Assembly (NCBI RefSeq): GCF_964194025.1
Contig: NC_134478.1
Span: forward strand, 49,352,001 to 49,416,000
Direction: 5' to 3'
Source: Convolutriloba macropyga
Taxonomy: Eukaryota
DNA length: 64,000 nt
The translations under genes and the position numbers were made by a program. Shown here in pieces: positions 7,271 to 59,900 of this stretch; within the stretch, counting starts at the first letter, position 1, and every line of letters starts with the position of its first letter. The notes below the pieces were generated by a model. It was not told where the DNA came from, made no database searches, and saw only the letters and a program-made list of their open reading frames with translations.

Positions 7271-7278
7271 TCTAAATT

Positions 7279-26436: not shown

Positions 26437-26467
<31 letters not shown>

Positions 26468-37980: not shown

Positions 37981-37986
37981 TTTATT
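37981..37986 (-). promoter_or_regulatory. Polyadenylation signal AATAAA of the minus-strand prohormone gene
   Basis: TTTATT on the plus strand, about 50 nt downstream of the TGA at 38037-38035. Confidence 0.5.
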
Positions 37987-38034: not shown

Positions 38035-38196
38035 TCATGGCTGGACGAAGAATACCCCGAAAGAGGGGTTAGTGAAGTGACACTTTGCCTCCGAGAACTG
38101 ATTCGCTGCCCAGCACACACTGCTCACAGATGAACACTTACACGCAAAACTGTTCGAGTTTGGACGTTTGCAAGGGGCTCCAAAGCGACATGGAAT
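38035..38196 (-). CDS. Last coding exon of a putative CART-like six-cysteine neuropeptide precursor
   Basis: Acceptor TTTAATAAATTTGTTTTAG|ATT, phase 0. Translates IPCRFGAPCKRPNSNSFACKCSSVSSVCWAANQFSEAKCHFTNPSFGVFFVQP* (53 aa, 6 Cys); the other two frames stop earlier; GC-rich island in AT-rich surroundings. Confidence 0.75.
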   Translation of the reverse strand: MPCRFGAPCKRPNSNSFACKCSSVSSVCWAANQFSEAKCHFTNPSFGVFFVQP

Positions 38197-41100
38197 CTAA
38201 AACAAATTTATTAAAAAGACCTATGTGTAACTCAAACATTTGAATCTATTCTGTATCTATATCCCCCCATCCCCCTTTGACAGCAATGTAATGAAATAAT
38301 TAAATCCTAATCACTGGTAGTGAGTGACCAACAACTTTTCATTAATTTTAATAGAGTGGCATTACACAGTAAGTCAACTAATTTCTTTTTTGCTTTTCAA
38401 TTTTTGTATTTTGAATGTTTTTGATCATCAAATTAATTTTCAAATGCTTAACTATACTGGATTTTATATTGATAATGCCATTCACTTCAAATGATAAATT
38501 TGGTCGATTAAACTGCATTATTTTACTCATCACAAAAGAACGAATAAAACTATGTCTTAAAACGTTACGCTTCTGTTTTTTCTAATAACTATGTAACAAA
38601 CTCTGCAAGAGATACCAAACACGTTTATCTCGTTCAATTTTCTCAAAATTTTACTTCGTTTAAAATGAAGAAAAGGCAAATTGATGCCAGCTGCTATCAA
38701 GCATATCTTTTTACGTGTTTTTTCCATGTTATCGTAAATTTTTGCAAAAAGTTGATGTTTGTACGAAAAGTGTTGACGGAATGATGAATAGAAGCGAAGA
38801 CTTATCTTATTGGTGAAAAGTTTAACGATTTATGTTAATAAACCTGTGTCAAAACTTGCTGGTAGAAAAAAAACTCAGCATAGGGTCCAAAAAGGGAAAA
38901 ATCTTCAAATGTAATTCTGCTATTAATAGCAGTTTATCGTCAAATTCTCTGCATGTGGTTGGTAAACTTCTCTAGCAAAAAATTTATTTCGCTTAGATTT
39001 CAATATGTATGCCGTTTGTCGAACGCAATTTGACATTGCACTGATTTTTGTCAATTGTTTCTATTCTTTTGGTTATATCCAAATTTGGATTGCGGAAGAA
39101 TCGAATAAAACAATTTATCATTAGTAGACTTTTATGTAATAGTTAAACCGGACCAGTTGTTGATTTATAAAAAAATGAAATAGAATCATTTGATGAATAG
39201 ATGAACGGCAATCATTTTTTATTCTGTTTTCTGTTTTTTTCCTACGAAAAAGTCTTCTATTGGAAAAAAAATCTTGAACTACACATCTATCAAAGTTCAG
39301 CTGTCTTTAGTGTAGAAATTGCTCTGATCATAAATAATCCTTTATATGGAACTTCTGGTATAAATTTTGTTTTTCAACTGAAAAACTGCCAACTTATTCA
39401 GTTACTTTATCACTGATTAATAGCAAATTTTTTCTGCCATTAGAGAGTTAAGTGCTATCAGTTAAGTGTCAATAAGTGTCAATAAGTGTCAATCAATAGA
39501 GAACATGTCTATCGATAAATGTTTTACTTGGGCTTTTCCTTCGAGCATTTATCGAAGATTAAGATTTCGAGGAGGACAAGTTGACTGAATATCACTAGTT
39601 TTCTTCAGTTTTTGGATCATTTTGAGGTAGTTTATTTAAATTTGTCATGTTTTGTTCATGTTAAAACCATTGCAAAAGTTTTTCTCTTTTTGTCACTTTT
39701 TATTGCCTGCCGAACAGTTATTGCAATTAATGTAGTTAAAAGTTCTGCGAACATTTGGCTGCATTTAATTGTTTTTCTGCCTTTTTTTATAAGAATTAAC
39801 GTAATTTTTGCTGGTAAATATTTCAACATATTCAATTTAGCGTGCATTTTATTTTTTCATATAAAACGTAGTTGCTGAATTGCTTTGTGCAAATGTTTTT
39901 CGAATCTAAACACTTTCTTTGCTAAAGTTCTGTTTTTATGAGAAAAGTGTGTCAAATAAAAATTTCTACCATTTTTCTCCAGTAGATGAATATATTTACT
40001 AAAGAAACTTGTTAGAATCTTTTTATAGATTGGAAAAGGCAATCTGTACTTCATTATAATGAACTGGGATAAATTTCGCTATATTAGGTTTTTCGCTAAA
40101 TTAGACTTCTTTATTACCAAGTTGTAATTGTTTTCAGCCATTGTTGGGCTCACAGCAAAAAATTCATAATGAAATTAATTTTAGTTTTCCAAAAATTTTA
40201 CTGCAATTAGTTCCCAGAATACTTTTCAGTTATAATAAATTTGTTATGCTACGATTTTCCTCAAAATTCTTAACAAAAAGTACTTTGCCAAAGTTCAACT
40301 GATTTTGAAAATGTTCTTTCAATCTTCTTATCTGCTGAAATAGGTTTACTTTCCGTATAAAACAAACCTCAATTATTCTTGTGCTTGCCATTTTTCCAAA
40401 TTAAATACTTTTTCTTGAAATTTTGTGAACTTAAATTTTTGGCAAGTTACTTCGTGAGAAAGAACTGAAGCAAGATTTTCCATTTTTTTGCTACTTGAGA
40501 CTCTGAATCAAATTCTCGACTTAAAGAGCTTTTTTCTAAATGGTTCTCACAAACGATGTTTAATTAAGCAATCAATTAGCTGGCAGAGGCTATCAAGATA
40601 ATAAAAATCGTTTTGTGAGAAAACGTTAAGACTCAAATAAACACAAAAAATTCTCCATATAAATCAAGTGACTTTTAATACTTTTTTATATTTTTTTCCA
40701 CACTGAAAAATTTGCTCTATTTTTTTAGAAAGTATTTTTTCAAACGGTGATTGAAAAATTGTATTGGTCGTTTTCCTCGAGTAGAACCAATGCTCCTATT
40801 AAAAAGTCTTCTAATGTTGTTCTAAGCTTTTTTTCTCGTTTTTTGAGAGTTATCGTTTTGTTATCCTTTGTTTATCATTACAGGTTTTTGGTTCATTTTA
40901 CTCACATGGGCGTACAATAACTCACATAGCTGCCTGTTTGCTAAATGTTCTGATGTGCTCACTGTTCTGAAGTTTTATATTTCTGTAGGTCATTTCAATA
41001 TATCTGTTTTTTCGATAATTTTCGGTTTTTCCTGGTTGTTTCACATGTCTAAATATGTCATTTTCAGTTTATAAAACTAATATAATTAAACCATTTAAAT

Positions 41101-44100
41101 GAGTTGTTTTCCAGTTATAAAATATTTTAACGTTTTTGTGTATTGGAGGTCATCTGTAATCCAAATTGAGCACTAAGGTGGGCATAGATCTTCATAAAGG
41201 GGGAGGCTGATCAAAACCTAGCTCACGTTACAAAGGTTTTGTGCCTGTGGACTTAGGGTTTCGAGACCAGCGCGGACTAAAAGCACACAAAATGAATCTT
41301 TTCTGATTTTTACTCTATTTCGTAATGAGATTTAATTCTTCTTGGTTGCTCTGTATTTGAGCTCATTACACAAAATTCTCTTGTTTTTACTCCGGTTAGT
41401 TTTGTTTTATTATTCTTATTATGCTCACTAAAATCATTGGCCCGGATCACTCTGAATAAATTATTTAACCGGAATTTAACTGTGGGCCAACTAAGTATAT
41501 ATATCGTATGTATTGTCATTTTTCTTTGATTTAGAATCAAACTAATATCTTCTAGTAAGGGAAAGCACTCATTTCGCCTGAAGAAATAGTCGCTTTGTTA
41601 CCGCCATACGGTATTAAGACAAACTGAAAGGCAAAAGAGGGACAATTATCAATTAACATCAAAAGCGAGCTAGAGAATGGAAATTGACCATTAATATAGA
41701 CATCAATTTGGGTCATATTGCAACCATTTATTTTTTAATTGGGTACTGGCCTATAAAATAAATTTTATTTGAAAAGTTCGTTCTAAAACGCCGACGGCAT
41801 TGTAAGCTTTGATATTTTCAGGAGCATTTAGTTCAAAAGGCCTACAATGTATTTAGATATAACTAGTCTTTTTCTGTCAATGTAGACCTCAAAGAGGAAA
41901 GAACTATCAATTATAAATCAATAATAGCCTCTTTCTTCATAGAATCAAGATAATTCACAAAGATGATAATTATGTTGCGTTTTATGTCATGGCAGTGACG
42001 TCCATTAAAGATCGGAATTCTGGCTGCTAATTTGGGAAGAAATTGAAAAATTTACAATCTGTAAACAATTTAGTAAATTTAAATGGGTATGAGGGAGCCA
42101 ACGCGCAATGATGGCAGCAACCGAGAAAGGAGTGAAAATAATTAAATTCATTCTCACTACTTTTCAACCTTACTTGAGAGCCAAAATCCCCGTTTTCCCT
42201 GTTTTTCGCAACCATTTTATATTAATAAAATGAAAAGCGGGATGGGAAAAAGTCGCAAATTGTTAATTTTCCTCAAAGCTGAATTATCCGTTAATATTAT
42301 TCAGAAAAGCCATTTTTAGAGCAGATCGAAAACCACTGACCATTTCAAGTTAACTTTTTTCCGCGAATAGTGGTAACGCGTTATAATACTAGAGTAAAAC
42401 TCACATCCGACTGCATAAGATCAAACTCAGAAACCAGAAATTCTCTGATCCATGATATAACTAAAAAGCTAATCTGCTTTTTCTCGCTTTGTCTAACTGA
42501 ATTAATGAAAAAAGTTATGACTTTCGAAACAGTTGAACATTCCCCTTGCTTTTGCAAAAGTTAGTCCCTAATCCCTCTATTCCAAATTCATAGTCGTTCA
42601 TTTTAATTTTTTGTCCTCAGACCATAAGTTATTTTAGAAATTTTTCAAATACCCTCTGTGCCGAAATTGTTGAAAAAAAAGCAAGATAAAATTGTCTTTT
42701 TTCAAGTTTCCTATCTACACTCTAACACGTTTTAACTAAATGCCTTATAGGACGAGGAAGTTAATTATACTAGTTGAGAAATTTGTTCACAAAATAATTA
42801 CAAAATTATCAGTGTCTCATTATACGAATACAATTCACTTTTAATGCATTAATTAAAAACAGTAACGTAAATTAAAAATTAGAGATGAAATATTTGCAAT
42901 TCAATCCAGAGACCCAAAGACAGCTGTTTTTCAACTGAGAAGACTTATTCAGTCAGCAGTTTTCTGAGTTTGGAGCACTATTTCTCAAAACCTATTTGAT
43001 TAATCTAAACACTGCTTATTTTCAAAAAGTTCCTTTCTGAAATTAGACCTTATCTACTGTTTCGTTCGTTATTTTTTAGTTCGTCTTTACGGTTACGGTA
43101 CAAATTTGTACTGAATTTTAATTGCGGTTAGGTGCAAGGAATTGAAGATTTCTGGCCTTTATAATTTTTCACAGATATTCGTAAAAGATGGTAGATTTTC
43201 ATTCCCTCGCTCAAACTGAAACCAGTTTGGATCATGAGTTGTTTACATAGTTTTTTTCAATATGTCTCCTTGTAATGACTCCGATAGTCACACATATGAA
43301 AGATGTAGTATTAAATCATGCTTCGTTTGTATTTCCTTTTTACATATTTTGTTATGATCACCAATAAGATGTCATAATACCAAAGCACTGATGCCAAATA
43401 TCGGCATGATGAACTTCAGGGTTCTGAAATTACGTGTCAAAAGGTCGAAAAGTATTTCACCGCTTAAATTTGCATGTGATAGAAAATTTTGCCAATCGAA
43501 CTGTGAATTTTTTACCTACGTAGGACAAGTTTGTATTTTGCTGGTTTACGAATACTTGACGCACTTCATTGCAGTTTTATTTTCGAGTGGTTTAGATGAA
43601 AAAATATCCTGGCGCTCACTGTTAATCTCGGCAAATCCTCGAAAGCAATTTGTTCCTTAACTTCAGTGTCTTAGCTTCAACATTCGCGGCAGACATTTTT
43701 TGAAACCATTTAAAGTAATATGAAGATCTCTTCTCTGCTGCCGCTTGAACTTAGTCTTGACACATTAGCTCCAATGCAGAAGACGGAAGACAAAAGAGTC
43801 ATTTTTTATATTTTATTTTTGAAAAATATCCTGAAAAACTTTGATTAGTAAAACGGCTGGTCATTTACAATGCAACGAGCTTCATTTTTAAATTTTGCTT
43901 TCTAGGATATCAGAAATCGAAAAATGTGTATCCAGCTTTGAAACAAAATCAATATAATTAATTTATTTTTGAGTTCTCCGCAGAATGTTGGGTTTATGGT
44001 AAGTTTTGCTAATTGTGATGGTTGAAAATGTGCAACGAATAACTCAAAAAAAGTAAGTTTTATCAGCAACCACGTTTTAGAATTAGATGGTGGTCAGCAC

Positions 44101-45455
44101 GCCATGACAACTGTGACGGTTAGGAAAGCTAGTTCAGACTTGCTGCAAAATGGGAGATATCAATCCCATTTGTCCCTGATGCATGTTTTTGGGTAAGCGC
44201 AGACAACAGTGACTAGTTTTTGTAGCTGCTACCCACACTCAGCATCACTGTTTGCCAAACCAACCACTGTTACCCTTGCTGACAGTATTTACTTTCCACG
44301 TTAGTTAGCAACGTGCCAATTAGATTGAAATGAAAGGGAAGCTATATGGAAGCTAAATGAAAAATTAGCAGTTTCTCCACCCTTCATATTAGGTCTCACG
44401 AGAACAATTAACTCTTAATAATGAATTAGGTCTAATTAATTAAAATTATTTTCAAGAATTAATTAAAATTCTATTCAAGCAAGTTTTAGGCTAACTGTAT
44501 AGTTTTGTGACCAATTTAGTGGCTCAAAATTGTCGTGAATGCTTGCGTTTTCCATGGTTACAAGAATTAAAATTCGTACAATTTTGTCACTGATGTCCAC
44601 AATTAACGTATCACTTTTTGATCGTGGACAAAATTTTCCGTAAAATGGAAATATGTGACGAGGTCTTTTCACTGTTTTCCTCGCCAAGCCCAAAAGTTCT
44701 CAATATTTCAAAATGTTCCTTTCACTAAGTAACTAAGTAGATTAATTTTATTCGCAAGTGAGAGATGAGAGTGATAGTGTTTCGTTAGGGCATTTTTCTT
44801 TTTTATCACACTTTTTTAGTTCTCAAATGCATGTGAACAAACAACTTGTGTTTCGTTGCACCTCAACATAAAAATAATCCAATTTTTATTTTCAATCATC
44901 TGAAATTGATCAATTGTAAAATCCAAAAGTTCCTACTTAGTTTGAAATTTTAAGCATCATGAGTTATCTTAACTTCTGTTTTGTCAGTTATTGGTAGCTA
45001 TAAACTGTAAGTGGTTGTAAATTGTTGGTGTAATAAACTGTTGAGCACTCTATAGCCCTGGAAAAGGTAGATAAAAAATAAATTATGACTTCAAAGAGCC
45101 TGTTTCATATTCACACTTATTCAAAGTGTCTAACATGTATTAAAAAATTGAACCTGTATGAAATTTTGCGTCTCCCCCCATTCTCAAATGAATAAGAAAT
45201 GTAAAGTCAAGTAACTCTACGGCGATAAAAATTTGATAGATGATAACAAATTTGAACTGCAAAAGAGCAGTTCTACTTATTTCCACTCCGATTAGAGTTT
45301 AAACATCATATTTACCCCTGCATTAATCACCGCCGCTTAATTCAAAACCTCAAATGTTTCACCCCAAACCCCTTTTGCAGACCAGAAGACCCTGTTAGTA
45401 TCGCAAAAAGATCCTAAAAGCACTGTCAAAACGCAGTGCCGGTAAGACATAGAAC

Positions 45456-45574
45456 GGTTAAGTGACTCTGCTTGAAGTCACTGAGATCGAGAATCTGGCG
45501 TTTATCGAGAACCGCGAAGCGGTTCGAGATATTAAGTCAGAATTTCGAAGTGACTTCTACGGAGTCACTTAACC
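45456..45574. repeat. ~120-bp imperfect palindrome with central GAACCGC-GAA-GCGGTTC hairpin
   Basis: GGTTAAGTGACTC...GAAGTCACT pairs with AGTGACTTC...GAGTCACTTAACC. Confidence 0.85.
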
Positions 45575-45826
45575 ATGCTTAAAACACGAAACGCGCACGT
45601 TTTAAACTGACGAAAGTCAATGAAAGTCAACTTCTGGTTAAGTAACAGTTTCTGGCATTTTGACTTCTGACACTCAAGACTTTCGGCATTTTAAAATGTG
45701 CACGTGAGTGTTTTAATTAAAAAAATTTAATTGATTCCCTCGCAGTCTATTACCTCGGATAATTACAGCTGCCACATCATCAGTATGGTATCATACTACT
45801 ATTATCACTTCATTTGAAGAAACATG

Positions 45827-45973
45827 GGATCTATTCTGTTTTACCCCCGGCAGATGTTTTAAGACGCCCTGGCGCACGTGCACTATTTTTACATATAGTA
45901 ACGAGCTATATAACAACTCATAATTTGTAACTGGGGGTCATAAAAACACTGGGGGCCGAAACAGAATAGATGC
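45827..45973. mobile_element. GG-ended MITE with 8-bp TSD (GAAACATG / GAATCATG)
   Basis: GGATCTATTCTGTTT...AAACAGAATAGATGC; flanks match 7/8. Confidence 0.8.
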
Positions 45974-46104
45974 GAATCATGTACCTTATTCCATCCAAAA
46001 CCGTTAATTTAATATTGGATTTCAACTCAGAAGATCATATCCAACAATTTTTTATCTGTCAAAGCAGATTTCTAACCCCCCACGAAAGAGAATAAAGAAA
46101 AATG

Positions 46105-46264
46105 GGATCTAATCTGTTTCGCCCCCCCCCAGTGTTTTTATGACCCACAGTTACATATTATATGTTGTTATATAACACGTTACTATGTAAGAAAATAGCA
46201 CGTGCGCCTGGGGGTCATACAAGATTTATGCTCACTAAGCTGGAGGGGGGGACAGAATAGATCC
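46105..46264. mobile_element. GG-ended MITE with 8-bp TSD (GAAAAATG / GAAAAGTG), inverted relative to the 45827 copy
   Basis: GGATCTAATCTGT...ACAGAATAGATCC; interior is the reverse complement of the 45827-45973 interior; flanks match 7/8. Confidence 0.8.
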
Positions 46265-46334
46265 GAAAAGTGCATTGTAGTAAAAGAGAGTTTACTTTAC
46301 TTTCTTCCTCATTCTCTGAATACAAATTCCGGTT

Positions 46335-46505
46335 GCGGAAAGAAACCCCCACGGAAAAAATCCCCGCTTCATTTTAGATAGGAATTAAACCCCCACGGAA
46401 ATAAACCCCCACGCAAATAAACCCCCACTTTACTATTAAAGAGCTACGCATTTAGCGCGTTTGGCCATGCTTCGCGGGCCATGGCCATGCCTCAGCGGCC
46501 CGTGG
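46335..46505. mobile_element. Probable DNA-transposon end with AAACCCCCACG subterminal repeats
   Basis: Five AAA(C/T)CCCC(C)AC-type motifs followed by a GC-rich GGCCATG repeat. Confidence 0.45.
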
Positions 46506-49149
46506 GACTTGATATGAAACTATCACAACTGAACAAATTATCACGACCGAATATCAATTATAAAGTTACAATTGTTGTGACTGTGTTAGGGCCCGTGGTA
46601 ATTGTTGGTTACATGTTTTGTTACAACTAGAATGATAATTTAACCTTGAATATTCTCTTTCAGGGTGCTCAGCAAAAATTCAAATTGCCTTAGACACACT
46701 GGAGACAAAGTTAATCTCGGTTAAATCAATCTCAATATAAAATTATTTCTCGCGTAATTTTAGTTTTCTTCGTACTGATTTCAGCTGAAGAGTCAGGTCA
46801 CGTCTGCAAAGGAAATTATTTAGGCATCAACTTTTTATAGGCAACTTTTCAATTCAAAACCTGATTACCAGAAACAGGGAAAATTAGCTATGGTTTTTAA
46901 AGAAAACAGGAGGCAATTTTGTTTGCTGAGAACAACCTCAAAAAGGGACAAAAATCAAAGCAATTTTAAGACTTCCATATCAGAAAGTTTCCAATTCAAA
47001 AGTCTAAAAAACCAAAATAAACTCAGAAAATTTCTTGACAGATTTTGTCAAGAATTTTCCATCGGGTAGTTTTGAGCTCTTGGTCAACAATTTGTTGTAC
47101 TGCAATCAAGTCCATGAATCCACAATTTCATTCATAAAGAGAGTGGCAATAATATTGGAACTACTTGAAACAATGCAAATACTTTTAATCAAATACTTTA
47201 AAAAACATAATATCAGCTGAATTCCAAATACAAATTTTCCTTCAAATTTGAACGAACTGATATCAGTTCAAATTAATTCAAGTTAACTTTTTTATAATAT
47301 TGCAGCGGTAAAGTTGCTTCAGAAAAAATTGTTTGTTTTTGTCACACGAAAAAATGTGGAAAATTTTATAATTATATACACTATAAAACTTTTTAGATGA
47401 ACCAAATTTAAAATTACTATAAAAATTATTTGCTAAATCATGGGACATTGTTGAAATTGGGTTGAGAGGGAGAGAGAGAAAGAGTTCTCATGTCGAAAAA
47501 AAATTCTTTGAGTCTCATTCCTCTGAACAATCAAATATCTATTTAGAACCGGAACCTATCACCAATTAAAACGAGCACAAACCATCTAAGAACAACATAA
47601 ACCAATCTAAAATGACATTTGAGGCTTAAATTTGGTGCCATAAAATGTTATACAATTTTTGATTAACGATGCTTTGCCTGAGTAATTAATTTCATTATTT
47701 TAAACAAAAAGAGGGACTACCCGTATCGAGACCGAATGGTTATCTTGTAAGAACTTGCAAGTTTCTTGCAAAAAATGGTTAACTTGTAAGAACTTGCAAG
47801 TGAATGGTTAACTTGTAAGAACTTGCAAGTCGAATGGTTAACTTGTAAGAACTTGCAAGTCGAATGGTTAACTTGTAAGTTTCAGTCCAAACTGAAAAAC
47901 ACACTGAAAACCGAATTTTTGATTAACTTCATCTAAGATTATTGGCAGTTATATCAAAGTTTCTTGAATTCAAGTTCATTTGACGAAAAAGGACTCCTCT
48001 TAAGCTGCACTAGCGAAAAAAATTCCAAAAAATTTTGACTGTTCAAAGTTTCTGACTTTATTAACTTTTATTGAGAAGAAGTTGAGAAGAATATGTTGTG
48101 GTCCATATTATGAATTTTCGCGGGTGGTTAAAATAATAATAATAAATTTGTTATTGTTGTCTGCCATTTTATGAAAAAATAAGTAAAAATTATCACTTGA
48201 ATGTTTTTCTTTGTACTTTCATCGTAATTTTTTAAACTTTCTTGTTGACATTCTCTACAAAGAACGTTAAAACTGCACATATTGGCCAACTGATATCTCA
48301 ATGATTGTTGTGATTTAACACGAGTTTGAGGGTCCTGCTTTCCCTTTGAGAAATTGCTGCTTAGCCGAAAGGAAACAAAAGTATTTTTTGCAATTTTTGA
48401 GGCGTTCAACGTTCTGTTTCGATCCGGGGCGATTCAAACTTCATAAAGCAGCTCTAAATCTTTCTTGTAAAGACGAAACTATTCCAAGTAGAAGGAAATG
48501 CCAAAAAACGTCAAATATCATGACTGTTTTACTGTAAATTAAACGACTTGTTCATATTTTACATTTTTTCTCAAACTTATTTGCCTAAAAATATTTGGTC
48601 TCTTAATTTTGTGCAAACTATACTAGTGTTTAAAAAAGCTCATTTAGTGGGGAATATTGAACATTGTACCAAAATTGTGAGGTTCTATGAAATACCAAAA
48701 AGAAGAGCAAAACTTTGACAAAACTCCGAAAAAACTACGCTTTTTCACTGAAAAAACCTCAAAAAATAACCATTTTAACAGTCAGCTGCAGGTTGTTTGT
48801 GATCAAAATGTCGCTCATTTCCTTGCCGTTCCAAATCAATACTTTTTCGGTTAAATTTTATGTTATTTTTTTCTAAGGGTCCAAAACTTCCTGTAACTTC
48901 CAATGCAGCAGAAAATAGGAAATTTGATAGTCGTAAAATTTTTGTCAATGAAATGTTTCAGAATTGCACAATCGGATTTCTGCTACCAAAAGCAGAATGG
49001 CTGTTCCTGAAAAACAGAAGGACATCAAATGATAGGCTCTCTTGGTAGAAAAAGTGAAGTGCAAGGACCATTATTTAAAAGTCAACACGTGATTCAATTT
49101 CTCTGTACTTTCAAGGATTACTTTTTAAAACTTTCTGGTTGACATTCTC

Positions 49150-49358
49150 NNNNNNNNNNNNNNNNNNNNNNNNNNNNNNNNNNNNNNNNNNNNNNNNNNN
49201 NNNNNNNNNNNNNNNNNNNNNNNNNNNNNNNNNNNNNNNNNNNNNNNNNNNNNNNNNNNNNNNNNNNNNNNNNNNNNNNNNNNNNNNNNNNNNNNNNNNN
49301 NNNNNNNNNNNNNNNNNNNNNNNNNNNNNNNNNNNNNNNNNNNNNNNNNNNNNNNNNN
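49150..49358. other. Assembly gap
   Basis: N run. Confidence 0.99.
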
Positions 49359-49826
49359 ATGAAAAATTTCTCTTTGTTATAGCCAGGACTTCAACCCGTC
49401 GACAACCCTTTGGCAACCCATCGTCAGCCCATTGGCAACCCATCGGCAACCCATCTTCATTCAACCCAAGAAAACAGAGAGAAAAACCCAAGAAAATCAA
49501 GAAATTTGAAAAAAAAATCAAGAAAATTGAAAAAGGAAATGAAAAAAAGAAGATGAAGAACACCTTTTCTGATGCTTTAGATTAATAATTTTGATGATTT
49601 TTTTGTTCTTTTGTCGATGCGCAGAATATGTGTACATTCATATCTTGCGACGTTTTACTGTTTTTTTACACCATAGGCAGAATGGTTATCTTGTAAGAAC
49701 TTGCAAGTTTCTGGCAGAAAAACTTGCGAGGCGATGCATCGCCTTGTAAGTTTCTGCCAGAAACTTGCAAGTTCTTACAAGATTAACATTCGCAAGATGA
49801 AGAGTTATCTTGTAAGAGCCTTGTAA

Positions 49827-50043
49827 GTCGAATGGTTAACTTGTAAGAGCCTTGTAAGTCGAATGGTTAACTTGTAAGAGCCTTGTAAGTCGAATGGTTA
49901 ACTTGTAAGAGCCTTGTAAGTCGAATGGTTAACTTGTAAGAGCCTTGTAAGTCGAATGGTTAACTTGTAAGAGCCTTGTAAGTCGAATGGTTAACTTGTA
50001 AGAATTTGCAAGTCGAATGGTTATCTTGTAAGAACTTGCAAGT
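49827..50043 (+). repeat. 31-bp tandem array GTCGAATGGTTAACTTGTAAGAGCCTTGTAA (7 units)
   Basis: Unit starts at 49827, 49858, 49889, 49920, 49951, 49982 and 50013; related array at 47735-47880. Confidence 0.95.
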
Positions 50044-51629
50044 TTTTGGAAGAAAAACTTGCAAGGCGATGCATCGCCTTGTAAGTTTCTGCCAGAAACT
50101 TGCAAGTTCTTACAAGATAACCATTCGGACTCGACCCGGGTATAGAGCTATTGAAAGAGTAGAACTGAATTAGTTTCATTAAAGAACAGTTTGCAGATCT
50201 TATATCTGAGCCCAATATGTAACAAATCTTCTATGCAATTAACTTTAAAAACTAGGAGTTTTAACTGGAAAATTAACAGTTTTCGTAACAGGATAGTAAT
50301 TTGACAAAGTTAACCTCACTTACAAAAATTCGTTTAATTTCAATTTCACACGCTTAAAATGTCAGAAAATCGACTTTCATCTTCAATTTAACAACATCTG
50401 TTTCGTCGTCTCTTCCATTAGAATCGCGCAAAATTATTGCACAAACTCCATCAGGATGTGTATGGTTTCTATGCATTACCACTATTGACGTAAAACTCGA
50501 CTCTTTAGGTTTGAAATTACCTAATTTTATACCATTATTTGTAAAAATTATATCTAGAAGTAGCAGTCTGCGCAATTTGAGAGTTGAGTGGCAGATTAAA
50601 TCAACAAATTCAAAAACCAACGATATGAACAAGTACCATGAACTGAAATAAATCAAAGTTTACGCAACGGAAATACTGTCGCAGATAATACCTCTGAAAC
50701 CAGTTAATTTCGCTCATCAGATTGGAAAAGTCAGTCTCATGAGTTATATATTTCTGAGTTCGAAGAATCAAGGGATCTACTTGAAGCTCTCTCAGTGACA
50801 GATACCAAACAATCAAGCAAAACTTTTATCTGGTCCTCGGACGACACTGGATGGAATTTCTCCTCAGTGAGCAAAAATAGAACCGTAGTTCTTGTTATCT
50901 AGTATATGTAAATACTTGTGATAACTTCAGATAACAAATAATAATGAACCGGATATATCAACAATCTCTGATTTGCTAAATCGCTTAAATGAAATCTAAT
51001 TACAAGACTAAGAATAAAATTCTTGTTTTTAATCGTGGAACAAGGAACTAATTAAAGTTTTTGGTCAATGGACACTCACGTTATATTTAAAACAAAAAGA
51101 CTTAAATTTTAATACAAAACCGTTCAATTATTCAAAGTAATTTTTTCTGGAGAGACATTAGGTCGGAAAACAGATTTAACGTTCACATTACTTTGACTGC
51201 CGTTATGTTCGGAAAATGAAAAAGTACTCTACAAAATCTGTTATATGCAACAATTTAATTTTATTTAAACAAATCAAGAGCCCCGTCTCTGGATTATAGA
51301 GTTTTTAATTCATTCACAATCTTTTTTAAAAAATGCATGAGTCAAATACTAGCTATTGGCTATTTTGGCCTAAAATTGTCTTTTGATAGGGCACAAGAAA
51401 ACATGAATTTTGTCATAGAATGGTTTTTTGATAGAGCAGTTTAAAATATAACATTCGTCAGCAGTCCAGATCACAGGGGATGTGGTCTGGCTGGGCATTT
51501 TTATACATCAATTGAACAGACTCATAATCTTATTCAAAAAATATTAAGGGTGAAGAGTTTTCTACGACAATAATATCTATGCATTACAAGATGCATCCTC
51601 TGACAGAACCTTACAGAATGAATGAATGA

Positions 51630-52045
51630 TTGATTAGAATTTATAATACCTATATTCAACCAGTTCTTCAGTACGGTGTGTTGAACTACGGAACAACAAA
51701 TAAAACATAGATCATGAAAATTAAAATTTACTAAAGATTCAATCTTTTGTCTTCAGTTTGAAGAGAAACGATTTTGTCGAAAAATTACGAGTGAAACGTA
51801 AACTATGCATTGTGAACGAACTCCAAGTACACTGATAAAGTATTAAAAGGAGAAATAGGCGGAACCAAACAATTTTGAACGGGAATTTTTTTGAAGAAGA
51901 GGTGAGGTTGTTTGCATGGGATAAAAGAAGAGTCCAGTTGAAACTAAGCAAAACAACCAAAGGAAATACAAAGATGATACGGAGCAGAGTGAGGCGACTA
52001 ACTAATAAGGTTGTAAATATAGATAGAGGCATAATAAACAATTTT
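51630..52045 (+). mobile_element. CR1/L2-type LINE 3' remnant
   Basis: Plus strand from ~51637 reads EFYNTYIQPVLQYGVLNYGTTNKT*, typical of the post-RT region of CR1/L2 ORF2; ends with AATAAAC. Confidence 0.65.
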
Positions 52046-52462
52046 TAACCCCAAATTCTGATACCGCCAACTCATTTTGAAATAATAATCAAGACAATTA
52101 CATATGCGGTACCGAAGATCTTTTTTGCTACTTTTTATGGTTTGAAACAGTTGATCCGAGGGTGTGTTAGCTCTTAATTTGTATTTCATTGTCAAAATGC
52201 CAAAAAGATTCAACAAGCAAACCGCTCCGTGAAACCTACGCTTCAAAGATCCAATAGGGAGGAATTGGGGCTGTGGGGGGGGGGTTGAAAAGTTAGCATC
52301 CAACCAATTCTGACTATCTTCTACGGCATCAGCTCGATGATCTTCAGCCTTGCAACATCCACCCCAGAATGTAACAGACAAAAAAGGAGGGGGCTTTAAA
52401 ATTGGTCTTACAGATGCAAAATTTTTAATAATTCCTAGTATACTTGCAACCATGTATCTTAC

Positions 52463-52832
52463 CTTCGGATTCTGAACATATCTGTTAACTGAAGTGTCCA
52501 CAACTGCCCTTTTATAAACTGTCATCTGGTCTTGATACGATTCCAATCTCTTCGCCATTTCCATCGTAGGACTGTCAACTCCTGGTTCCAGGTCTCGTTT
52601 GAAATCCAGAGGATCCAGATCAGCCGGAGCCCCGTCTGCAAACGCTATTGTTAAACATATAAATGAAATAATCATGGGAAGGAAATGTAGCAAGGGTCCT
52701 TTTTGAGTGATAGAAGCTGTGCGCGAATGTTTGGATCTATGCGAGGTGTGGCTCAGAGACGCTGAGATGGTTGTTGATGCATTCTGATTGGATGATTTAT
52801 GTTCCTTGCAATGTCTGTCATATTTATTGAAC
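52463..52832 (-). CDS. Exon encoding signal peptide and KR-punctuated propeptide of a secreted prohormone (putative CART-like)
   Basis: Acceptor TTGACTGTCTGTTTTACAG|G at 52833/52832; donor CCGAAG|GTAAGA at 52463/52462 (phase 0). Translation ...GPLLHFLPMIISFICLTIAFADG-APADLDPLDF-KR-DLEPGVDSPTMEMA-KR-LESYQDQMTVY-KR-AVVDTSVNRYVQNPK; in-frame ATG at 52675. Confidence 0.8.
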
Positions 52833-54152
52833 CTGTAAAACAGACAGTCAATCGATAGATCAGTCAGCATTTTTCAGATCAGAGGTGTTTGATAACCCAA
52901 GTTTAGGCTGCGAGTTATGAGTTATGAAAGGGTCGTACTCGACAAGGAGTTTGTATATGAAAAGAACCCGTTGAACTCCAATAGTTAATGATAATTCTTT
53001 ACTTGATTATAATAATGATCATAATGATTGCATGAACATTAGCTCAAGTCAAGTTGTTGACGCTCGATTTCAACTTGACCCAAATTAGATACTGATCGGC
53101 TCAACTCTAATTTTTTCAAGCTGGACTAAAAAATTTGACGTGAAACCCGCTAAAGCATCTAACGTAGGCAACGGTTATGACCATTCAAAATTTTTAATGT
53201 TCAGGAATTTTCATGTTCATGAAGAATTGTACATGTTTCTAATGAAATGGCAATCGTAATATCTGTGCTACATGGTTCCATACAGTCTAACAACTTCGCA
53301 GTATAGCTAATTTGCGCCAAAGAATAAATGCTAGTTTTGCTCGAAGAAATATTAGTTTGGTGATGCTCGTGGTATTATAATTCCAAAAAAAATCAAATCC
53401 GCGGAATATGAAAAGAGCAAGCTCGACAATAAAGTGCAGGTATGAAAGGTCATGCTAGATCAGAAAATGATCAAAAGACATCAAACTCGACGCATGAGAA
53501 GAAATAAGACTGACTTTAATTGTAGTGCCGTATAGTTATAGTCACAGTTAAGCAGGACAGTCATTATTGACAGTACTTGGAGAACAATATAAATAGGAGA
53601 GCAATTTCATAAGCGTGAATAAGAACCTTACTGATAAGATTGTTCTCAAGACTAAACAGTAGACGTACCAGAAGGCACATTCCATATAAAGATCTCTTCC
53701 ATCCTAATTATGTAACATTTTTCTCAGTTCTTTCCTTCTGAGTAGAAATTGTCAGAAAAAAAAATCTTGTGTAAAAAATAACCTTTAAAAAACTTAAGTT
53801 GTACTACAAGCTATCGATGAAGGTGAAAATTGATTTTCCTCTCAATCTTTTCTTAAACTGTTTTAATGAAATGAAGTATCATATATAAAATAACAATAAC
53901 AATATCAAATAACAAACGTGATCTCTGAGCTAAGTTTCTGAATTCTTTGATTTAAATTAAAACTAATTAAGATTAAAACAAACACTTGGTTCAAAAATTG
54001 TAATACAGAATATCTCATGTATATTCTTGAGTTTAAATGGTTTAACTTTGAAAAACATCGAAGGGATTTTCTCATTCAGCAGCAGGCAGACTTTAGAGAA
54101 TAACTGTTGTATCTGGTGAAACATATACCGATGTCTGCTCATATATCTATCA

Positions 54153-54355
54153 CATCTTTTCCGTTTGTGCCCCCCCCATCCAGCTTAGTGGGTGCATATT
54201 GTATTTATTTGCAACTCCGAGCACAGGATAATATACTGATACCTGCTCTGCAAGAAAGATAGTTATAGTTAATTAATAGTTAATAATTATCATTGTTATT
54301 TAAGATAGGCATAACGTAGTTGGGGAGGGGGGACGGGGTGGCACGGAAAAGATCC
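54153..54355. mobile_element. Diverged GG-ended MITE of the CACTAAGCTGG family
   Basis: ATCTTTTCCGT...CCAGCTTAGTGGG ... CACGGAAAAGATCC. Confidence 0.65.
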
Positions 54356-54947
54356 CTTATTTCTTAACATAATTTTTACTAATCCAAACGTGCTCGCTAT
54401 TTCATCTCAGCATTTTGATGAAATAGCTCTACCAAAAACGTTCCATAAATATTAGGTATTTAAGAATTTCTTTAAAATTCCGAAATTTACTTACTTTTCA
54501 GAATTTCGAGTTTTAATGTGGCGTTCCGAGAGTAATTGCATGGTTTTTAAATAAAGTTTCGACTCATTAATTTTAATGTATTGTTTTGTGTGATTTCTGT
54601 AGAAGGTACATTTTTATTCAACTTTCAAGTGCTATTTGGTCAGAAAATTGATTGTTGATTGAATTGTCTTCAAAAAGACTTCATAACTCTTGTGAGTTAT
54701 GAATTATTAATGAAACCCAAGACGTTCAATTTCTAGTCTCACATGGCGGAATGCTCTTATTGTATTTTTTCAGAAAAGGGAGTTAAGTTTTGCTTATTGG
54801 GAGAAATTTCATTGTTTATGCAAAAATTTACAATTGAAGAATAATTCAATCGGAATAATTAAGGTCCATCTTAAAAAATGCCAAAAATTTTTACCAATGA
54901 AGTCCAGCCCTGTTGATTTAACAAAAATAATTCGCGCACAAATTTGG

Positions 54948-55069
54948 GGTCTTTCCCATTATAGCCCCCCCCCATGAAATTATAGCCCCCATTATGGTAT
55001 AATTACCATGTTTGGGGGGGCTATAGGTTATCTGACCACTAAGCTGGGGGGGCTATAATGGGAAAGACC
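54948..55069. mobile_element. GG-ended MITE (GGTCTTTCCCATTATAGCCCCCC TIR)
   Basis: Near-perfect ~25-bp TIRs, CACTAAGCTGGGGG motif, CAAATTTG on both flanks; a further partial TIR at ~55080. Confidence 0.8.
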
Positions 55070-56935: not shown

Positions 56936-59900
56936 CAAGGTACCTACAAAAGGCAGTCGCTGTATAAATAACACTAGCACTTATTTCACAATAGATTCCT
57001 GCGCTGCAAGTTGATCAATTTCTTTGAGTAAAAAATTTTCATTCCTTTAAAAATCTATAGTAGTTTTGCAGATTAAATATTCGGTGTAAAATTATTTGCA
57101 AATTTTAGACAACAACCTGTGGATTACAATCTCAGATCTAAAAAAATCATTGCGATTACATTGCACTCAAAAAAAGTATTTAATTGGCATAACTGTTGAA
57201 TCGTCATCCGATATAAAATAGTTTTGTTGTATACGCAAAAATAGTTTTTATGGAAATCAACGGGATAAATGGGGACCTTTTTAAATTGATTATGACATTT
57301 TTTTACGTGTTACGTGATCTGAATGCAAATGGAAGAAGCAAAAAAAGTCAAAGAATTTTTTTTCCTAATGATCGATACTGTGCATTCAACTGTAGATTTT
57401 TGGGACACCTGAGATTTGGGTATTGGCAACTGACATTTGTTGCAAACACTCTGACAAAATGAAATATTTTTAGTGAATTTTTGGAATAACATATAAATAT
57501 AACTTTTTTAGTTTCTGTATTATTGAAGTGGATTAGAATACGGACAACAGTGCACTGATCACTCTGCTCTTATTGTTCTCCAAATACTTCGTTATGGATA
57601 GGTTCAAAATATGATATTTTAGACTTTTTTGCCACATTATTTTCAATTTTGAATCAAGCCACTCCTTAAGCTGAATAATTTTAGTTTTACTTTTTTTACC
57701 ATGATGCAATGTTGGTGGCTGTAAATTATCAATATAACCGAGAGGTTAAAGTTTACATGCCTTGAGAATAATCTAAACTAAATATTGAAATACTCAAAAT
57801 TAGGCGTTATTCTATTTATTATCTGGTTCTGACTAGTTTTACCCTTTACACATTAAGTTGTTCATTACTATATATAAAGCTATGTTTGCCAAGAGTTTAT
57901 TCGTCTATTTGGAATGACTTTAAAAACATCTTTTAGAGAACAATTGAAAAGAATAATAAAAATTGTACAGTATACTCACTTGTCTTCCATTAGAATAAAA
58001 CTTTCTTTCGTACGGTACCTGACTGTTAAATGGGGCCTGATTCCTCGATTTCAGTTCACGGATAATTTAGCTGATCATTTTGTGACAATCTTTTCTTACA
58101 TTTTCAGTTCGAGGTATTTATATGAAATTAAAATTCATCGCTTTTCAAGAGTTTTCCTTTCGGAGCTTTCTTCTCTCATTTTATAATATTTTCCATTGCT
58201 TTTTAATGCTGCAAGTTTTTGCTAAGAGTTCCTTGAAAAAAAAAACAAAACTCTTGCCTAGACATTTTAATGGCTCTCTCCCTCTCTCGCACTTATTTGT
58301 AAGTTTATTATTATCTCCTACAGAAACAAAGGGATGTTGCTTTCATCATTTTTCTAACACGAGGGTCATTAACGGGAAATATATAAAATTAACGGGAAAT
58401 GGTAAAACATTGCTGTTTAAGGATTGAGCAATTTTCATATCAGTTTTGATGCAAATTTTGGAACAAAGGCGCCTCGACAGCAATATATACGAATATCAAA
58501 GCAGTAACACTCGATTAAAAAAATCGATCGTCATTTATTTTACTTATAAACAAAAAGTTTCCATAGACCGAAAAGGTGCCAGTTATTTGAGTAAAAATTA
58601 ATGTTGATTTACTTTGAAACATTTTAAATCATAATGAAATTTGTTTAAGCGAAAAAAGAACTTGGAGATGACTTAGCTAATTTGTAGCCTTTTCCTTCAA
58701 AGGACACCCGCCATTGATAACTAAAATTTGAGTGGCGGAACATTTCTCCGTGAAATTAAAATTAATTACCTGCTAACTTTTTGCAACCTCGCTTAGTGGA
58801 GAAACTATACACTCTACTAGTTTTTTTGTTGGGTCAATTTTGTCCCATCGATAAAACATAGAAAGACATATTTAGTAGCATAAAAAAGGCCATCAAGCTT
58901 AGAATATTTTAATGCAGGTTTTTTTTTAATTTCGTATTTTTCTAGAAAAATTGAGGTTTGAAAATTTGGAAATAATCGGCCAATTCCCGTTGTTTTTTGC
59001 TCCTTTTCTCTGTATTTTTTCATATCTTGATCAAATTTTGCTCAATTATTTAAAAATGTTAACAATAGTGTTATTAGTAAAAACTTTACAGATAGAGTAG
59101 GGTTTGTAAACTCTTTGATCCAAATTTTTTGCAATAAGAAAACTGTTTGAAAAGTTGACAATTCAGTTTTTTTTCTTGAAAAATGGCACCAAAAACTTTG
59201 TTTTCGACTATTTTTTTCCAAATTGGCCAAACCTTAGCAAACTAAAATAAGGCTTATTTCCACTTCTTTTTTCAAAGAGAGTAATCTGGGATTAAATATT
59301 CTCCAATCATTGGTGGGAACTCATACTGGAGAAGAAATTTTACTCAGACTTCAGTAATAAAGAAATCAAAAATTTAAACCATGAAATTATTTGAAAAGGC
59401 TTTTAAGTAAAGTGCAAAACTGATTTTGGGCCAATTTTACGTTTTTAGAGAAAATTTTGGCTATTTCACTTCTGTTTTTCCTGTTTTTCACTTCCTTCAT
59501 TGGAGAGTGCTGCTCACGCTAACATCTTTTTAAATTAGGCTATAGTTTTATGTTCTTTTTGTGTTATTTCGTACATTGATCTTCTAAAAAAGGAATCAGT
59601 GTTAATTTGCAAGTAAAATACTTCCTTAAGATTACTTTTTTGAAAAGTTTTTTTTTGAAATTTTCAGTCTTTTCGGGATTTTAGCGTTAATCTTATTAAT
59701 GAGAATTGTTATATATACTTCCCTTGAAATAGTCTAATCATTTTCTCGGAATTACTTTTGGGTTAATCACTTTTCTAACCACGATTGTTTTTTAGTAGCA
59801 ATATGAATAAGTAAATCAAAAAATGATTAAACTGATGACAAAACTGAGAAGGCGATTAATCTTCTCAACACACTAAAGACAAAAATTAGTTCATTAAGTG

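What the first reader, a model, noticed from the sequence alone, without database searches (positions are those of the whole stretch)
38035..52832. Hidden spliced neuropeptide gene: a CART-like six-cysteine prohormone in an invertebrate genome
Seen in sequence: two GC-rich minus-strand exons with canonical, phase-compatible splice sites (52463 AAG|GTAAGA; TTTTAG|ATT 38196) join across 14.3 kb. From Met 52675 they give a 124-aa protein: MIISFICLTIAFADG / APADLDPLDF KR DLEPGVDSPTMEMA KR LESYQDQMTVY KR AVVDTSVNRYVQNPK|IPCRFGAPCKRPNSNSFACKCSSVSSVCWAANQFSEAKCHFTNPSFGVFFVQP*, followed by AATAAA. Established knowledge (recalled, not searched): the human CART precursor is 116 aa, with signal peptide, acidic pro-region, KR site and then [38 protein letters not shown] (C-x5-C-x11-C-x-C-x5-C-x6-C); as I recall it has a phase-0 intron just before the Cys domain. 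Here the spacing is C-x5-C-x9-C-x-C-x6-C-x10-C, with the same CxxGxxC, basic residues in loop 2, K before the last Cys, hydrophobic-Pro before the first Cys, and a phase-0 intron two codons before Cys1. Inference: a CART-like three-disulfide peptide hormone outside vertebrates, where CART is generally not recognised. Alternatives are a half colipase/prokineticin-fold peptide or a lineage-specific knottin or toxin. The ORF track misses it entirely.
Basis: partly seen in the sequence, partly recalled or inferred. Interest (0 to 1): 0.92.

Follow-up and report, generated by a model that had tools for sequence, protein, structure and literature searches.

The report
Acoel six-cysteine secreted peptide gene
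The two exons form a real, already annotated gene of the acoel worm Convolutriloba macropyga that encodes a precursor of a conserved 68-residue six-cysteine secreted domain; that domain belongs to an unnamed family also seen in arthropods and rotifers, and no test tied it specifically to vertebrate CART.

Summary
**Observation: confirmed.** The two minus-strand exons (52675-52463 and 38196-38035) read as stated. Their junction NPK|IPC is the one used in RefSeq models XP_075257037.1 and XP_075257036.1 (uncharacterized LOC142349392, Convolutriloba macropyga). Intron-free transcript contigs of relatives show the same join. So the gene is real but not hidden.

- The RefSeq models add alternative 5' exons (ATG at 57990 or 54541).
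- An upstream motif, FN[KI]YDRHCKE, is conserved with synonymous-only changes, so the true start probably lies before Met 52675.
- The N gap lies inside the intron and does not touch the coding sequence.

**What the product is.**
- The conserved part is a 67-68 aa C-terminal peptide that follows the only conserved dibasic site.
- Synonymous differences are near saturation (pS 0.75) while pN is 0.19.
- A paralogue on chromosome 1 has the same phase-0 intron.
- At least 12 shorter relatives (signal peptide plus domain) cluster at C1:44 Mb.

**CART homology: not supported.**
- No Pfam CART hit at E ≤ 10, and hhalign probability is 1%.
- CART structure 1HY9 ranks only eighth (Z 2.4-2.6), tied with generic knottins.
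- The clear matches are unnamed arthropod and rotifer proteins (Foldseek E 4e-6, TM 0.82-0.85, 26-29% identity over the whole domain).

**Function.** A convertase-released secreted ligand is an inference. No RNA reads could be laid.

The parts
57980..57990 (-). Coding part of the alternative first exon of RefSeq isoform X2 (ATG GAA GAC AA|gtgagt). Its 5' UTR extent is unknown.
   Evidence: locates the MED(K) of P0002 here, followed by a GT donor. P0002 is XP_075257037.1.
54495..54541 (-). Coding part of the alternative first exon of RefSeq isoform X1 (MQLLSERHIKTRNSE + AA|gtaagt).
   Evidence: P0010 is XP_075257036.1.
52463..52832 (-). Main coding exon. The acceptor is ttttacag| before 52832 and the donor is AAG|gtaaga after 52463. 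It encodes the N-terminal motif FNKYDRHCKE, a Ser/Thr/basic linker, the hydrophobic segment, the pro-region, the KR site and the first 15 residues of the mature peptide.
   Evidence: The frame is open from the acceptor. The motif is conserved in the orthologue, and 4 of its 5 codon differences are synonymous.
52673..52675 (-). It is probably internal.
   Evidence: The orthologue has no usable Met before its hydrophobic segment except the upstream one, with an in-frame stop further up.
52637..52693 (-). Hydrophobic segment LLHFLPMIISFICLTIAFA, followed by DG|AP. It is either the h-region of a signal peptide or a type II signal anchor.
   Evidence: Its mean Kyte-Doolittle score is 2.28 over 19 aa. 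The net charge N-terminal of it is +5 to +8.
52508..52513 (-). Conserved dibasic site (K-R) immediately before the conserved peptide. This is the inferred convertase cleavage site.
   Evidence: The alignment shows KR, KR, RR and KR at the same place in P0002, P0004, P0003 and P0005. The C. macropyga paralogue has RR.
52463..52507 (-). First 15 codons of the predicted mature peptide (AVVDTSVNRYVQNPK). In the model they form the N-terminal strand of the domain.
38197..52462 (-). Phase-0 intron of about 14.3 kb. It contains the assembly gap at 49150-49358 and high-copy repeats at about 49.6-50.2 kb.
   Evidence: Searches show the splice sites. One search shows even genomic depth and the repeat peaks.
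38035..38196 (-). Last coding exon: 53 codons plus TGA. It holds the six-Cys core C-x5-C-x9-C-x-C-x6-CW-x9-C (ten residues between Cys5 and Cys6, counting the Trp) and the conserved tail FGVFFVQP.
   Evidence: There are paralogues in the same genome. Purifying selection is shown.
37981..37986 (-). AATAAA polyadenylation signal, 49 nt after the stop.
   Evidence: Read directly.

Best explanation
LOC142349392 of the acoel Convolutriloba macropyga is a real gene of at least three exons.

**The precursor (165-192 aa)** consists of:
- a short conserved N-terminal motif;
- a basic Ser/Thr-rich linker;
- one hydrophobic export or anchor segment;
- a fast-evolving acidic pro-region;
- a single conserved dibasic site;
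- a strongly conserved 67-68 aa C-terminal domain with six cysteines.

**The domain** folds (AlphaFold models) into a small all-beta, disulfide-stapled, knottin-like core. It is extended by an N-terminal strand and a C-terminal G-x-x-F-x-Q-P tail.

**The family** is unnamed and has no Pfam model.
- In C. macropyga it has two prohormone-type genes (this one and C1:35.42 Mb) and at least 12 short 'signal peptide + domain' genes.
- Unnamed arthropod and rotifer proteins of 91-191 aa are its structural relatives.

**Inferred mechanism.** The precursor enters the secretory pathway. A furin or prohormone-convertase-type enzyme cuts after KR/RR. The free 68-aa three-disulfide peptide is released and acts outside the cell, most likely as a ligand.

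**Shown:** gene structure, conservation, family, predicted fold class.
**Inferred:** cleavage, secretion, ligand role.

It is not demonstrably related to vertebrate CART.
For: **Gene and junction.**
- Sequence reads.
- RefSeq proteins containing the join.
- 5' exons located in the window.
- Organism: RefSeq names, and the 1175.98 Mb assembly described in PMC13650328 matches the size of G000.

**Orthologue and paralogue transcripts.**
- L030, L031 and L032 carry complete ORFs with in-frame stops upstream.
- The C. macropyga paralogue has the same phase-0 intron two codons before Cys1.

**Conservation.**
- The mature part is 70% identical to the orthologue while the pro-region barely aligns. Only the last dibasic site is kept.
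- pN 0.19 against pS 0.75.

**Family size in the genome:**

**Fold.**
- Model 1 has pLDDT 86, but only one of its five models is confident.
- Model 2, of a different family member, has all five models at 81-86.
- Both give the same top matches: knottins in the PDB and two arthropod clusters in the ESM Atlas (TM 0.83 and 0.70, then 0.75 and 0.66).
- AFDB clusters: E 3.7e-6 to 1e-3, TM 0.73-0.85, rmsd 1.3-2.1 Å, 25-29% identity over 63-68 residues.
Against: **No RNA evidence from this species.**
- Support comes only from the RefSeq models, relatives' transcripts, and a small third-specimen run (X6) that holds 90% of the last-exon words. X6 is only inferred to be the RNA-seq run.

**Unverified steps.**
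- Cleavage at KR, secretion and any signalling role are untested.
- The 19-22 residue hydrophobic segment after a 50-68 aa basic N-terminus could be an uncleaved type II anchor rather than a signal peptide.

**Alternative functions remain open.**
- The tandemly expanded short relatives look more like defence or gland-secretion genes than hormone genes.

**Limits on the arthropod and rotifer link.**
- Their sequences could not be fetched, so that link rests on predicted structures and Foldseek identities.
- An exhaustive HMMER search with a 53-position profile did not reach them.

**Disulfide connectivity** could not be read because no coordinates are returned.
Confidence: 0.6

Rival explanations
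1. True but very distant homologue of vertebrate CART. The 68-aa peptide would be an invertebrate CART-type satiety or neuroendocrine peptide with I-III, II-V, IV-VI disulfides.
For: - Six Cys with a shared C-x5-C ... C-x-C layout, and a precursor with a dibasic site before the Cys peptide.
- 1HY9 aligns over 38-39 of its 41 residues at rmsd 2.3-2.7 Å and 20-21% identity, Z 2.4-2.6, with both models.
Against: - No Pfam CART hit at E ≤ 10 for six family members.
- 1HY9 is absent from the PDB profile search at E ≤ 10.
- hhalign probability is 1%, with only 23 columns aligned.
- CART is absent from the top 30 Swiss-Prot AFDB matches.
- In the structure lists it ties with unrelated spider, sponge and cactus knottins.
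- Three of the five loop lengths differ.
- The family-defining Y, CW and G-x-x-F-x-Q-P tail have no CART counterpart.
- The best relatives are arthropod and rotifer proteins, not chordate ones.
Confidence: 0.06
2. A defence, toxin or gland-secretion knottin (an antimicrobial, anti-predator or mucus/adhesive component) rather than an endogenous signal.
For: - The top PDB matches are ICK toxins and antimicrobial knottins: purotoxin-1 (Z 3.3), tachystatin A and B, Ep-AMP1, ALO3.
- At least 12 tandem and segmental copies of short 'signal peptide + domain' genes lie at C1:43.99-44.14 Mb, a pattern typical of effector families.
Against: - All Z values are at most 3.3, so they indicate a fold class only.
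- This gene and its paralogue are single-copy.
- They are under strong purifying selection.
- They carry long pro-regions with a conserved convertase site, unlike the cluster genes.
- The acoel immunity paper held no mention of such peptides.
Confidence: 0.2
3. A divergent EGF-like domain on a type II membrane-anchored precursor. It would act as a shed or cell-bound ligand of the growth-factor kind rather than as a stored neuropeptide.
For: **EGF-like sequence signals.**
- Weak EGF hits: P0004 PF00008, E 0.0099, 16.6 bits; exon 2 EGF_3, E 0.085.
- The best PDB sequence matches are Notch1 and DLK1 EGF modules over x-P-C-x2-G-x2-C ... F-x-C-x-C.
- Multi-EGF proteins follow the family in the exhaustive search.
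- Some AFDB relatives are auto-named 'EGF-like domain-containing'.

**Membrane-anchor signals.**
- The N-terminal extension is conserved and positively charged.
- It precedes a 19-22 aa hydrophobic segment.
Against: - All EGF scores are below the Pfam gathering cut-offs.
- The domain lacks the first EGF cysteine and has a different C-terminal half.
- No EGF module appears among PDB chains with Z ≥ 2 for either model.
- Small residues (A-x-G) after the hydrophobic segment fit signal-peptidase cleavage.
Confidence: 0.14

Closest known systems
Unnamed arthropod and rotifer small secreted proteins: AFDB cluster representatives A0A834P9N3, A0A226EJH9, A0A6A0HDW2, A0A7R8ZXS6, A0A1L8DP62, A0A7R9B6F8, E2AW68, A0A3M7QFK2; two ESM Atlas arthropod clusters of 74 and 92 members
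   Same: - The whole 63-68 residue domain superposes: TM 0.73-0.85 for the six clear AFDB matches, falling to 0.70 (E2AW68) and 0.51 (the rotifer A0A3M7QFK2); rmsd 1.3-2.1 Å for the clear matches, 25-29% identity throughout, Foldseek E down to 3.7e-6.
- The match is reproduced with a second, independent model.
- Their overall size (91-151 aa) resembles the short acoel relatives, which are a signal peptide plus the domain.
   Different: - They have no described function and no Pfam family.
- Their sequences could not be retrieved, so residue-level conservation is unchecked.
- HMMER did not link them.
- The acoel gene here adds a long pro-region, a dibasic site and an N-terminal extension.
Vertebrate CART (CARTPT; Pfam PF06373; structure 1HY9)
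   Same: - Six Cys in a C-terminal peptide that follows a dibasic site.
- C-x5-C and C-x-C elements.
- A small beta-rich, knottin-class fold: Z 2.4-2.6, rmsd 2.3-2.7 Å over 38-39 residues.
   Different: - No profile similarity.
- Loop lengths are 9-12, 5-7 and 9-11 here against 11, 5 and 6 in CART.
- CART ends one residue after Cys6, whereas this domain continues with a conserved 13-22 residue tail and begins with a conserved strand 8 residues before Cys1.
- The invariant Trp after Cys5 is absent from CART.
Inhibitor-cystine-knot (knottin) peptides, e.g. purotoxin-1 (2KGU), Hc3a, J-atracotoxin, tachystatin B, AGRP
   Same: They are the best solved-structure matches for both models, and they cover the Cys core: Z 2.0-3.3, rmsd 1.7-3.2 Å over 32-40 residues.
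   Different: - The Z scores are low and the sequences unrelated.
- Most have 8-10 Cys with a CC doublet.
- None has the extra N- and C-terminal strands.
- Disulfide connectivity here is unknown.
EGF-like domains (Pfam PF00008, PF12947)
   Same: A local motif P-C-x2-G-x2-C-x(7-10)-F-x-C-x-C corresponds to EGF Cys2-Cys5.
   Different: - Scores are below the gathering cut-offs.
- The first EGF Cys is missing.
- The C-terminal half differs (C-x6-CW-x9-C).
- There is no EGF module among the structural matches.

Membership tests
CART (Pfam PF06373) | Significant match to the CART family profile or sequence | tested here: not met
   - hmmscan at E ≤ 10 gives no CART hit for exon 2, P0002, P0010, P0004, P0003, P0005 or P0001.
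- The family profile against PDB sequences does not list 1HY9 at E ≤ 10.
- hhalign against the 1HY9 sequence gives probability 1%.
CART (Pfam PF06373) | Cys spacing C-x5-C-x11-C-x-C-x5-C-x6-C, with the peptide ending just after Cys6 | tested here: not met
   - This gene has C-x5-C-x9-C-x-C-x6-C-x10-C. The family range is x9-12, x5-7 and x9-11.
- A conserved 13-22 residue tail follows Cys6.
CART (Pfam PF06373) | Fold of 1HY9 | tested here: inconclusive
   Z 2.4 and 2.6 at rank 8 in both searches, tied with unrelated knottins. It is absent from the Foldseek PDB and Swiss-Prot lists.
CART (Pfam PF06373) | Disulfides I-III, II-V, IV-VI | not testable with these tools
   Model coordinates are not returned (one search shows no model files).
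Unnamed acoel/arthropod/rotifer six-Cys domain | Whole-domain structural match with detectable sequence identity | tested here: met
   - AFDB clusters: E 3.7e-6 to 9.7e-4, TM 0.73-0.85, 25-29% identity over 63-68 residues.
- ESM Atlas: TM 0.83 and 0.70. With the second model: 0.75 and 0.66.
Unnamed acoel/arthropod/rotifer six-Cys domain | Shared invariant residues (Y, six C, F-x-C-x-C, CW, G-x-x-F-x-Q-P) at the protein's C-terminus | tested here: inconclusive
   This is met among 11-14 acoel sequences. It is not checkable for the arthropod proteins, whose sequences could not be fetched.
EGF-like domain (PF00008/PF12947) | Score above the Pfam gathering threshold, and six Cys in the EGF pattern | tested here: not met
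   16.6 bits against a cut-off of 21.5, and 13.5 against 28.5. The first EGF Cys is absent.
Knottin / inhibitor cystine knot fold | Three-disulfide knotted beta core | tested here: inconclusive
   Knottins are the top PDB matches for both models, but Z is at most 3.3. Connectivity is unknown.
Neuropeptide / peptide-hormone precursor | Export signal, a conserved convertase site flanking a conserved peptide, and a variable pro-region | tested here: met
   At the sequence level only.
- Hydrophobic segment.
- KR or RR conserved in five of five A/B-type genes.
- Mature part 70% identical, while the pro-region barely aligns.
Neuropeptide / peptide-hormone precursor | Expression in neurons or endocrine cells, and detection of the processed peptide | not tested
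   - No RNA run could be laid.
- The sequence is not in the main text or the six held supplementary files of the xenacoelomorph neuropeptidome paper PMC6188537.

The most novel reading that the evidence does not exclude
The 68-aa six-Cys domain is the ligand of an ancient, so far unrecognised bilaterian peptide-signalling family shared by acoels, arthropods and rotifers. In acoels it is made from a convertase-processed and possibly membrane-anchored precursor. A very deep relationship to vertebrate CART, whose invertebrate counterpart has never been found, is not excluded.
Probability: 0.15. Interest if true: 0.75.

Novelty: new variant of a known kind. Interest (0 to 1): 0.35.

Why it matters
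Acoels have few recognisable bilaterian neuropeptides. The published xenacoelomorph neuropeptidome (PMC6188537) does not list this precursor, at least in its main text and the six supplementary files held as text.

Here is a conserved, convertase-type precursor whose mature domain has structural relatives in arthropods and rotifers. It would make a testable candidate for an old secreted signalling or defence module that has no Pfam family or name.

The claim that would have mattered most, CART outside vertebrates, found no support in the profile tests and only non-specific support in the structure tests. That headline should not be carried forward on present evidence.

Tried and rejected
**RNA evidence.**
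- Runs X1-X4, found with exon 1, turned out to be genomic. Depth was an even 23-45x through the intron and flanks (X4 only about 3x) and there was no joint at 52463.
- That used the single read-laying run, so the junction could not be seen in reads.
- A second run search found X6, a small run from a third specimen that holds the last exon.

**Sequence searches.**
- Word-indexed protein search with exon 1 alone: nothing.
- With the domain alignment A3: only C. macropyga's own genes.
- One search was a parameter slip, corrected.
- ESM Atlas feature searches: no usable hit for the mature peptide. For P0001 only sub-threshold EGF-type leads.

**Paralogue first exon.** A crude signal-peptide and donor scan of the 30 kb upstream of the paralogue's last exon found nothing. 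The exon was later located with P0003.

**Structure searches.** Foldseek against the PDB and Swiss-Prot AFDB gave nothing below E = 1.

**Literature.**
- No paper links CART to invertebrates.
- No paper cites the AFDB accessions.
- The acoel immunity paper has no Cys-rich peptide section.

**Readings rejected.**
- Chance ORF join.
- The internal GTAAGT at 38141 as a donor.
- Extra Cys-rich exons giving a 10-Cys prokineticin-type protein.
- A hidden exon in the N gap.

All four are contradicted by the RefSeq models and the colinear relatives' transcripts.


Full report
**1. The observation**

Reading the minus strand confirms the finding letter for letter.
- ATG at 52675 opens a 71-codon stretch ending ...CAG AAT CCG AAG|gtaaga at 52463.
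- ...ttgttttag|ATT CCA TGT at 38196 opens 53 codons ending at TGA (38037-38035).
- AATAAA lies at 37986-37981.
- The assembly gap (49150-49358) lies inside the intervening 14.3 kb and touches neither exon.

**2. The gene is real and the junction is right**

An exhaustive HMMER search used a profile of the Cys domain (alignment A1) against 1.84 billion representatives. It returned only five family clusters.

One of them, P0002, is the product of this locus.
- An exact look-up names it XP_075257037.1, 'uncharacterized protein LOC142349392 isoform X2 [Convolutriloba macropyga]'. A second isoform is XP_075257036.1 (P0010).

The organism is supported independently. G000 has 1,175,981,408 bases in 4,694 pieces, and the C. 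macropyga genome note reports 1,175.98 Mb in 4,694 scaffolds (PMC13650328).

Relatives supply transcript-level evidence.
- P0004, P0011 and P0012 are orthologues. One sits on the 1,265-nt intron-free contig L030, assembled from run ERR1719499. From the accession I take this run to be a Tara Oceans metatranscriptome (my own reading; the tool gives only the accession). It reads ...IQNPRIPCRSG... straight through.
- P0003 and P0005 (contigs L031 and L032) are orthologues of a second C. macropyga gene at C1:35.42 Mb.
- In that paralogue the first exon ends ...YQRNTN|gtgagt and the last begins ctacag|ATT CAT TGT. The intron is therefore in phase 0, two codons before Cys1, as here.

Between C. macropyga and the orthologue, the 67 mature codons have pS 0.75 (near saturation) against pN 0.19. 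This is strong purifying selection.

- No extra Cys exons are spliced in.
- The GTAAGT at 38141 is coding.
- The exons do join.

**3. Corrections to the gene model**

The RefSeq isoforms start in alternative upstream exons.
- ATG at 57990, with donor after 57980.
- ATG at 54541, with donor after 54495.
- Both are spliced to the acceptor before 52832.

Several observations suggest the extension is translated.
- The orthologue mRNA has an in-frame stop upstream. Its first Met precedes the same motif (MW-FNIYDRHCKE against ...K-FNKYDRHCKE).
- It has no usable Met ahead of its hydrophobic segment.
- Within the 10-codon motif, four of five differences are synonymous against a background of saturated synonymous sites.

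The hydrophobic segment is 19-22 residues long and follows a net-positive N-terminus. It could be a long-n-region signal peptide cut after A-x-G, or a type II anchor.

Only the last dibasic site is conserved: KR, KR, RR, KR, RR in five genes.

**4. The family**

The same C-terminal domain occurs at least 14 times in this genome.
- The paralogue at C1:35.42 Mb.
- At least 12 copies in a cluster at C1:43.99-44.14 Mb, partly a 17.6-kb segmental repeat.
- Copies on two unplaced scaffolds.

RefSeq models the cluster genes as proteins of 103-112 aa consisting of a signal peptide and the domain (P0001, P0016, P0017).

The shared pattern, always at the protein's end, is V-x3-[VI]-x2-Y-x5-7-C-x5-C-x9-12-(F-x-C-x-C)-x5-7-CW-x9-11-C-x8-11-G-x-x-F-x-Q-P.

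Exon 1 of the window gene has no paralogue.

**5. Is it CART?**

The tests were as follows.
- Pfam at E ≤ 10 reports no CART match for any of seven family sequences. It reports only sub-threshold EGF hits.
- A 71-position family profile against all PDB sequences lists Notch1 and DLK1 EGF modules (E 0.6-1) but not 1HY9.
- hhalign of the family against 1HY9 gives probability 1% over 23 columns.

Two AlphaFold models were made.
- The window peptide: best model pLDDT 86, the other four about 50.
- P0001's domain: all five models at 81-86.

Full-PDB structural alignment gives the same list for both models.
- Knottin toxins come first: purotoxin-1, Z 3.3, rmsd 1.7-2.0 Å over 35 residues.
- CART is eighth: Z 2.4 with rmsd 2.3 Å over 38 residues, and Z 2.6 with rmsd 2.7 Å over 39 residues.
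- All rows are tied within one Z unit and far below the level at which the tool's own notes allow a specific claim.

Foldseek against the PDB and Swiss-Prot models finds nothing below E = 1, and CART is not among the 30 best Swiss-Prot rows.

What the tests support is a knottin-class fold, the same broad class in which CART's solved structure turns up in these lists. No test ties the domain specifically to CART.

**6. What it does resemble**

Foldseek against the AlphaFold DB fold clusters gives clear matches over the entire 68 residues, including the N-terminal strand and C-terminal tail that CART lacks.
- E from 3.7e-6 to 9.7e-4.
- TM 0.73-0.85.
- rmsd 1.3-2.1 Å.
- 25-29% identity.

The matches are uncharacterised proteins of 91-191 aa. 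One row is auto-named 'putative conserved secreted protein'. Two further, weaker rows (E 5e-3 and 4e-2) are auto-named 'EGF-like domain-containing protein'. The tool gives no organism for these rows. From the accession series I judge most to be arthropods and A0A3M7QFK2 a rotifer (my own reading).

The ESM Atlas gives two unnamed clusters of 74 and 92 members whose commonest phylum is Arthropoda. TM is 0.83 and 0.70 with model 1, and 0.75 and 0.66 with model 2.

I could not fetch these sequences, and HMMER alone did not reach them. The link is therefore structural plus Foldseek identity.

**7. Mechanism**

Shown:
- a selected, spliced gene;
- a precursor with an export segment, a variable pro-region and one conserved dibasic site;
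- a conserved six-Cys domain of knottin-like predicted fold;
- an acoel gene family with arthropod and rotifer structural relatives.

Inferred:
- entry into the secretory pathway;
- cleavage after KR/RR by a furin or PC-type enzyme;
- release of a three-disulfide 68-aa peptide that acts extracellularly.

I favour a ligand role for the two single-copy, pro-region-bearing genes. A defence or gland-product role is a serious rival, especially for the tandem cluster. So is a shed ligand on a type II anchor.

**8. Evidence I could not get**
- The runs found with exon 1 were genomic: even depth across the intron and no splice joint.
- A small run from a third specimen (X6, 80 M letters) holds 90% of the last-exon words. 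The genome note lists exactly three specimens: HiFi, Hi-C and RNA-seq. X6 is therefore probably the RNA-seq run, but that is inference.
- The xenacoelomorph neuropeptidome paper does not contain this precursor in its main text or its six held supplementary files.

**9. Verdict**
- The prohormone-like architecture holds, with a revised N-terminus and a single conserved cleavage site.
- The CART reading is not supported.
- What remains is an unnamed six-Cys secreted-domain family shared by acoels, arthropods and rotifers. This is of moderate interest and easy to test.

Noticed in passing
window 52802-52831 (-) and L030:308-337: The N-terminal motif FN[K/I]YDRHCKE is conserved between C. macropyga and the orthologue from run ERR1719499. 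Four of its five codon differences are synonymous. It lies upstream of the hydrophobic segment, and its role is unknown (a cytoplasmic tail motif?).
   Followed up: partly
G000 C1:43,993,000-44,142,000 (loci L003, L005, L006, L017-L027): A cluster of at least 12 copies of the same six-Cys C-terminal domain, partly a 17.6-kb segmental repeat. RefSeq models them as proteins of 103-112 aa with a signal peptide and the domain (LOC142349346, LOC142349334, LOC142349299).
   Followed up: partly
L028:1309-1686 (+) and L029 (unplaced scaffolds C1543 and C547): Two near-identical copies in which the domain is preceded by a C-x-C-x-C-x-C-rich stretch (..CAENCNCDCSCV..CSCACDCEGE..). This may be a larger Cys-rich protein.
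   Followed up: no
window 5594-6586 (-), and more broadly about 3000-8000: Retroelement remnant. One ORF carries RVT_1 and RT_RNaseH Pfam domains (E 7e-13 to 2e-19). The neighbouring ORFs gave no Pfam hit.
   Followed up: partly
window 23517-26525 (-): Three tandem copies, about 1.3 kb apart, of the same 119-136 aa ORF containing a (TG)n-derived CVCVCV tract. This is a tandem repeat, not obviously a gene.
   Followed up: no
window 49600-50190, 54128-54324, 54916-55112: Summed contig depth in the genomic runs reaches 1e3 to 2e5, against about 30 elsewhere. These are high-copy repeats inside the introns of this gene, next to the N gap and between the alternative first exons.
   Followed up: no
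P0014 (ENA genomic contig, 27 kb) and P0015 (ENA contig, 217 kb): Prokaryote-style ORF calls on genomic contigs of close relatives. They read exon 1 of this gene (92% identity) and of the paralogue's orthologue straight into the intron. So other acoel assemblies hold the genes unannotated.
   Followed up: no
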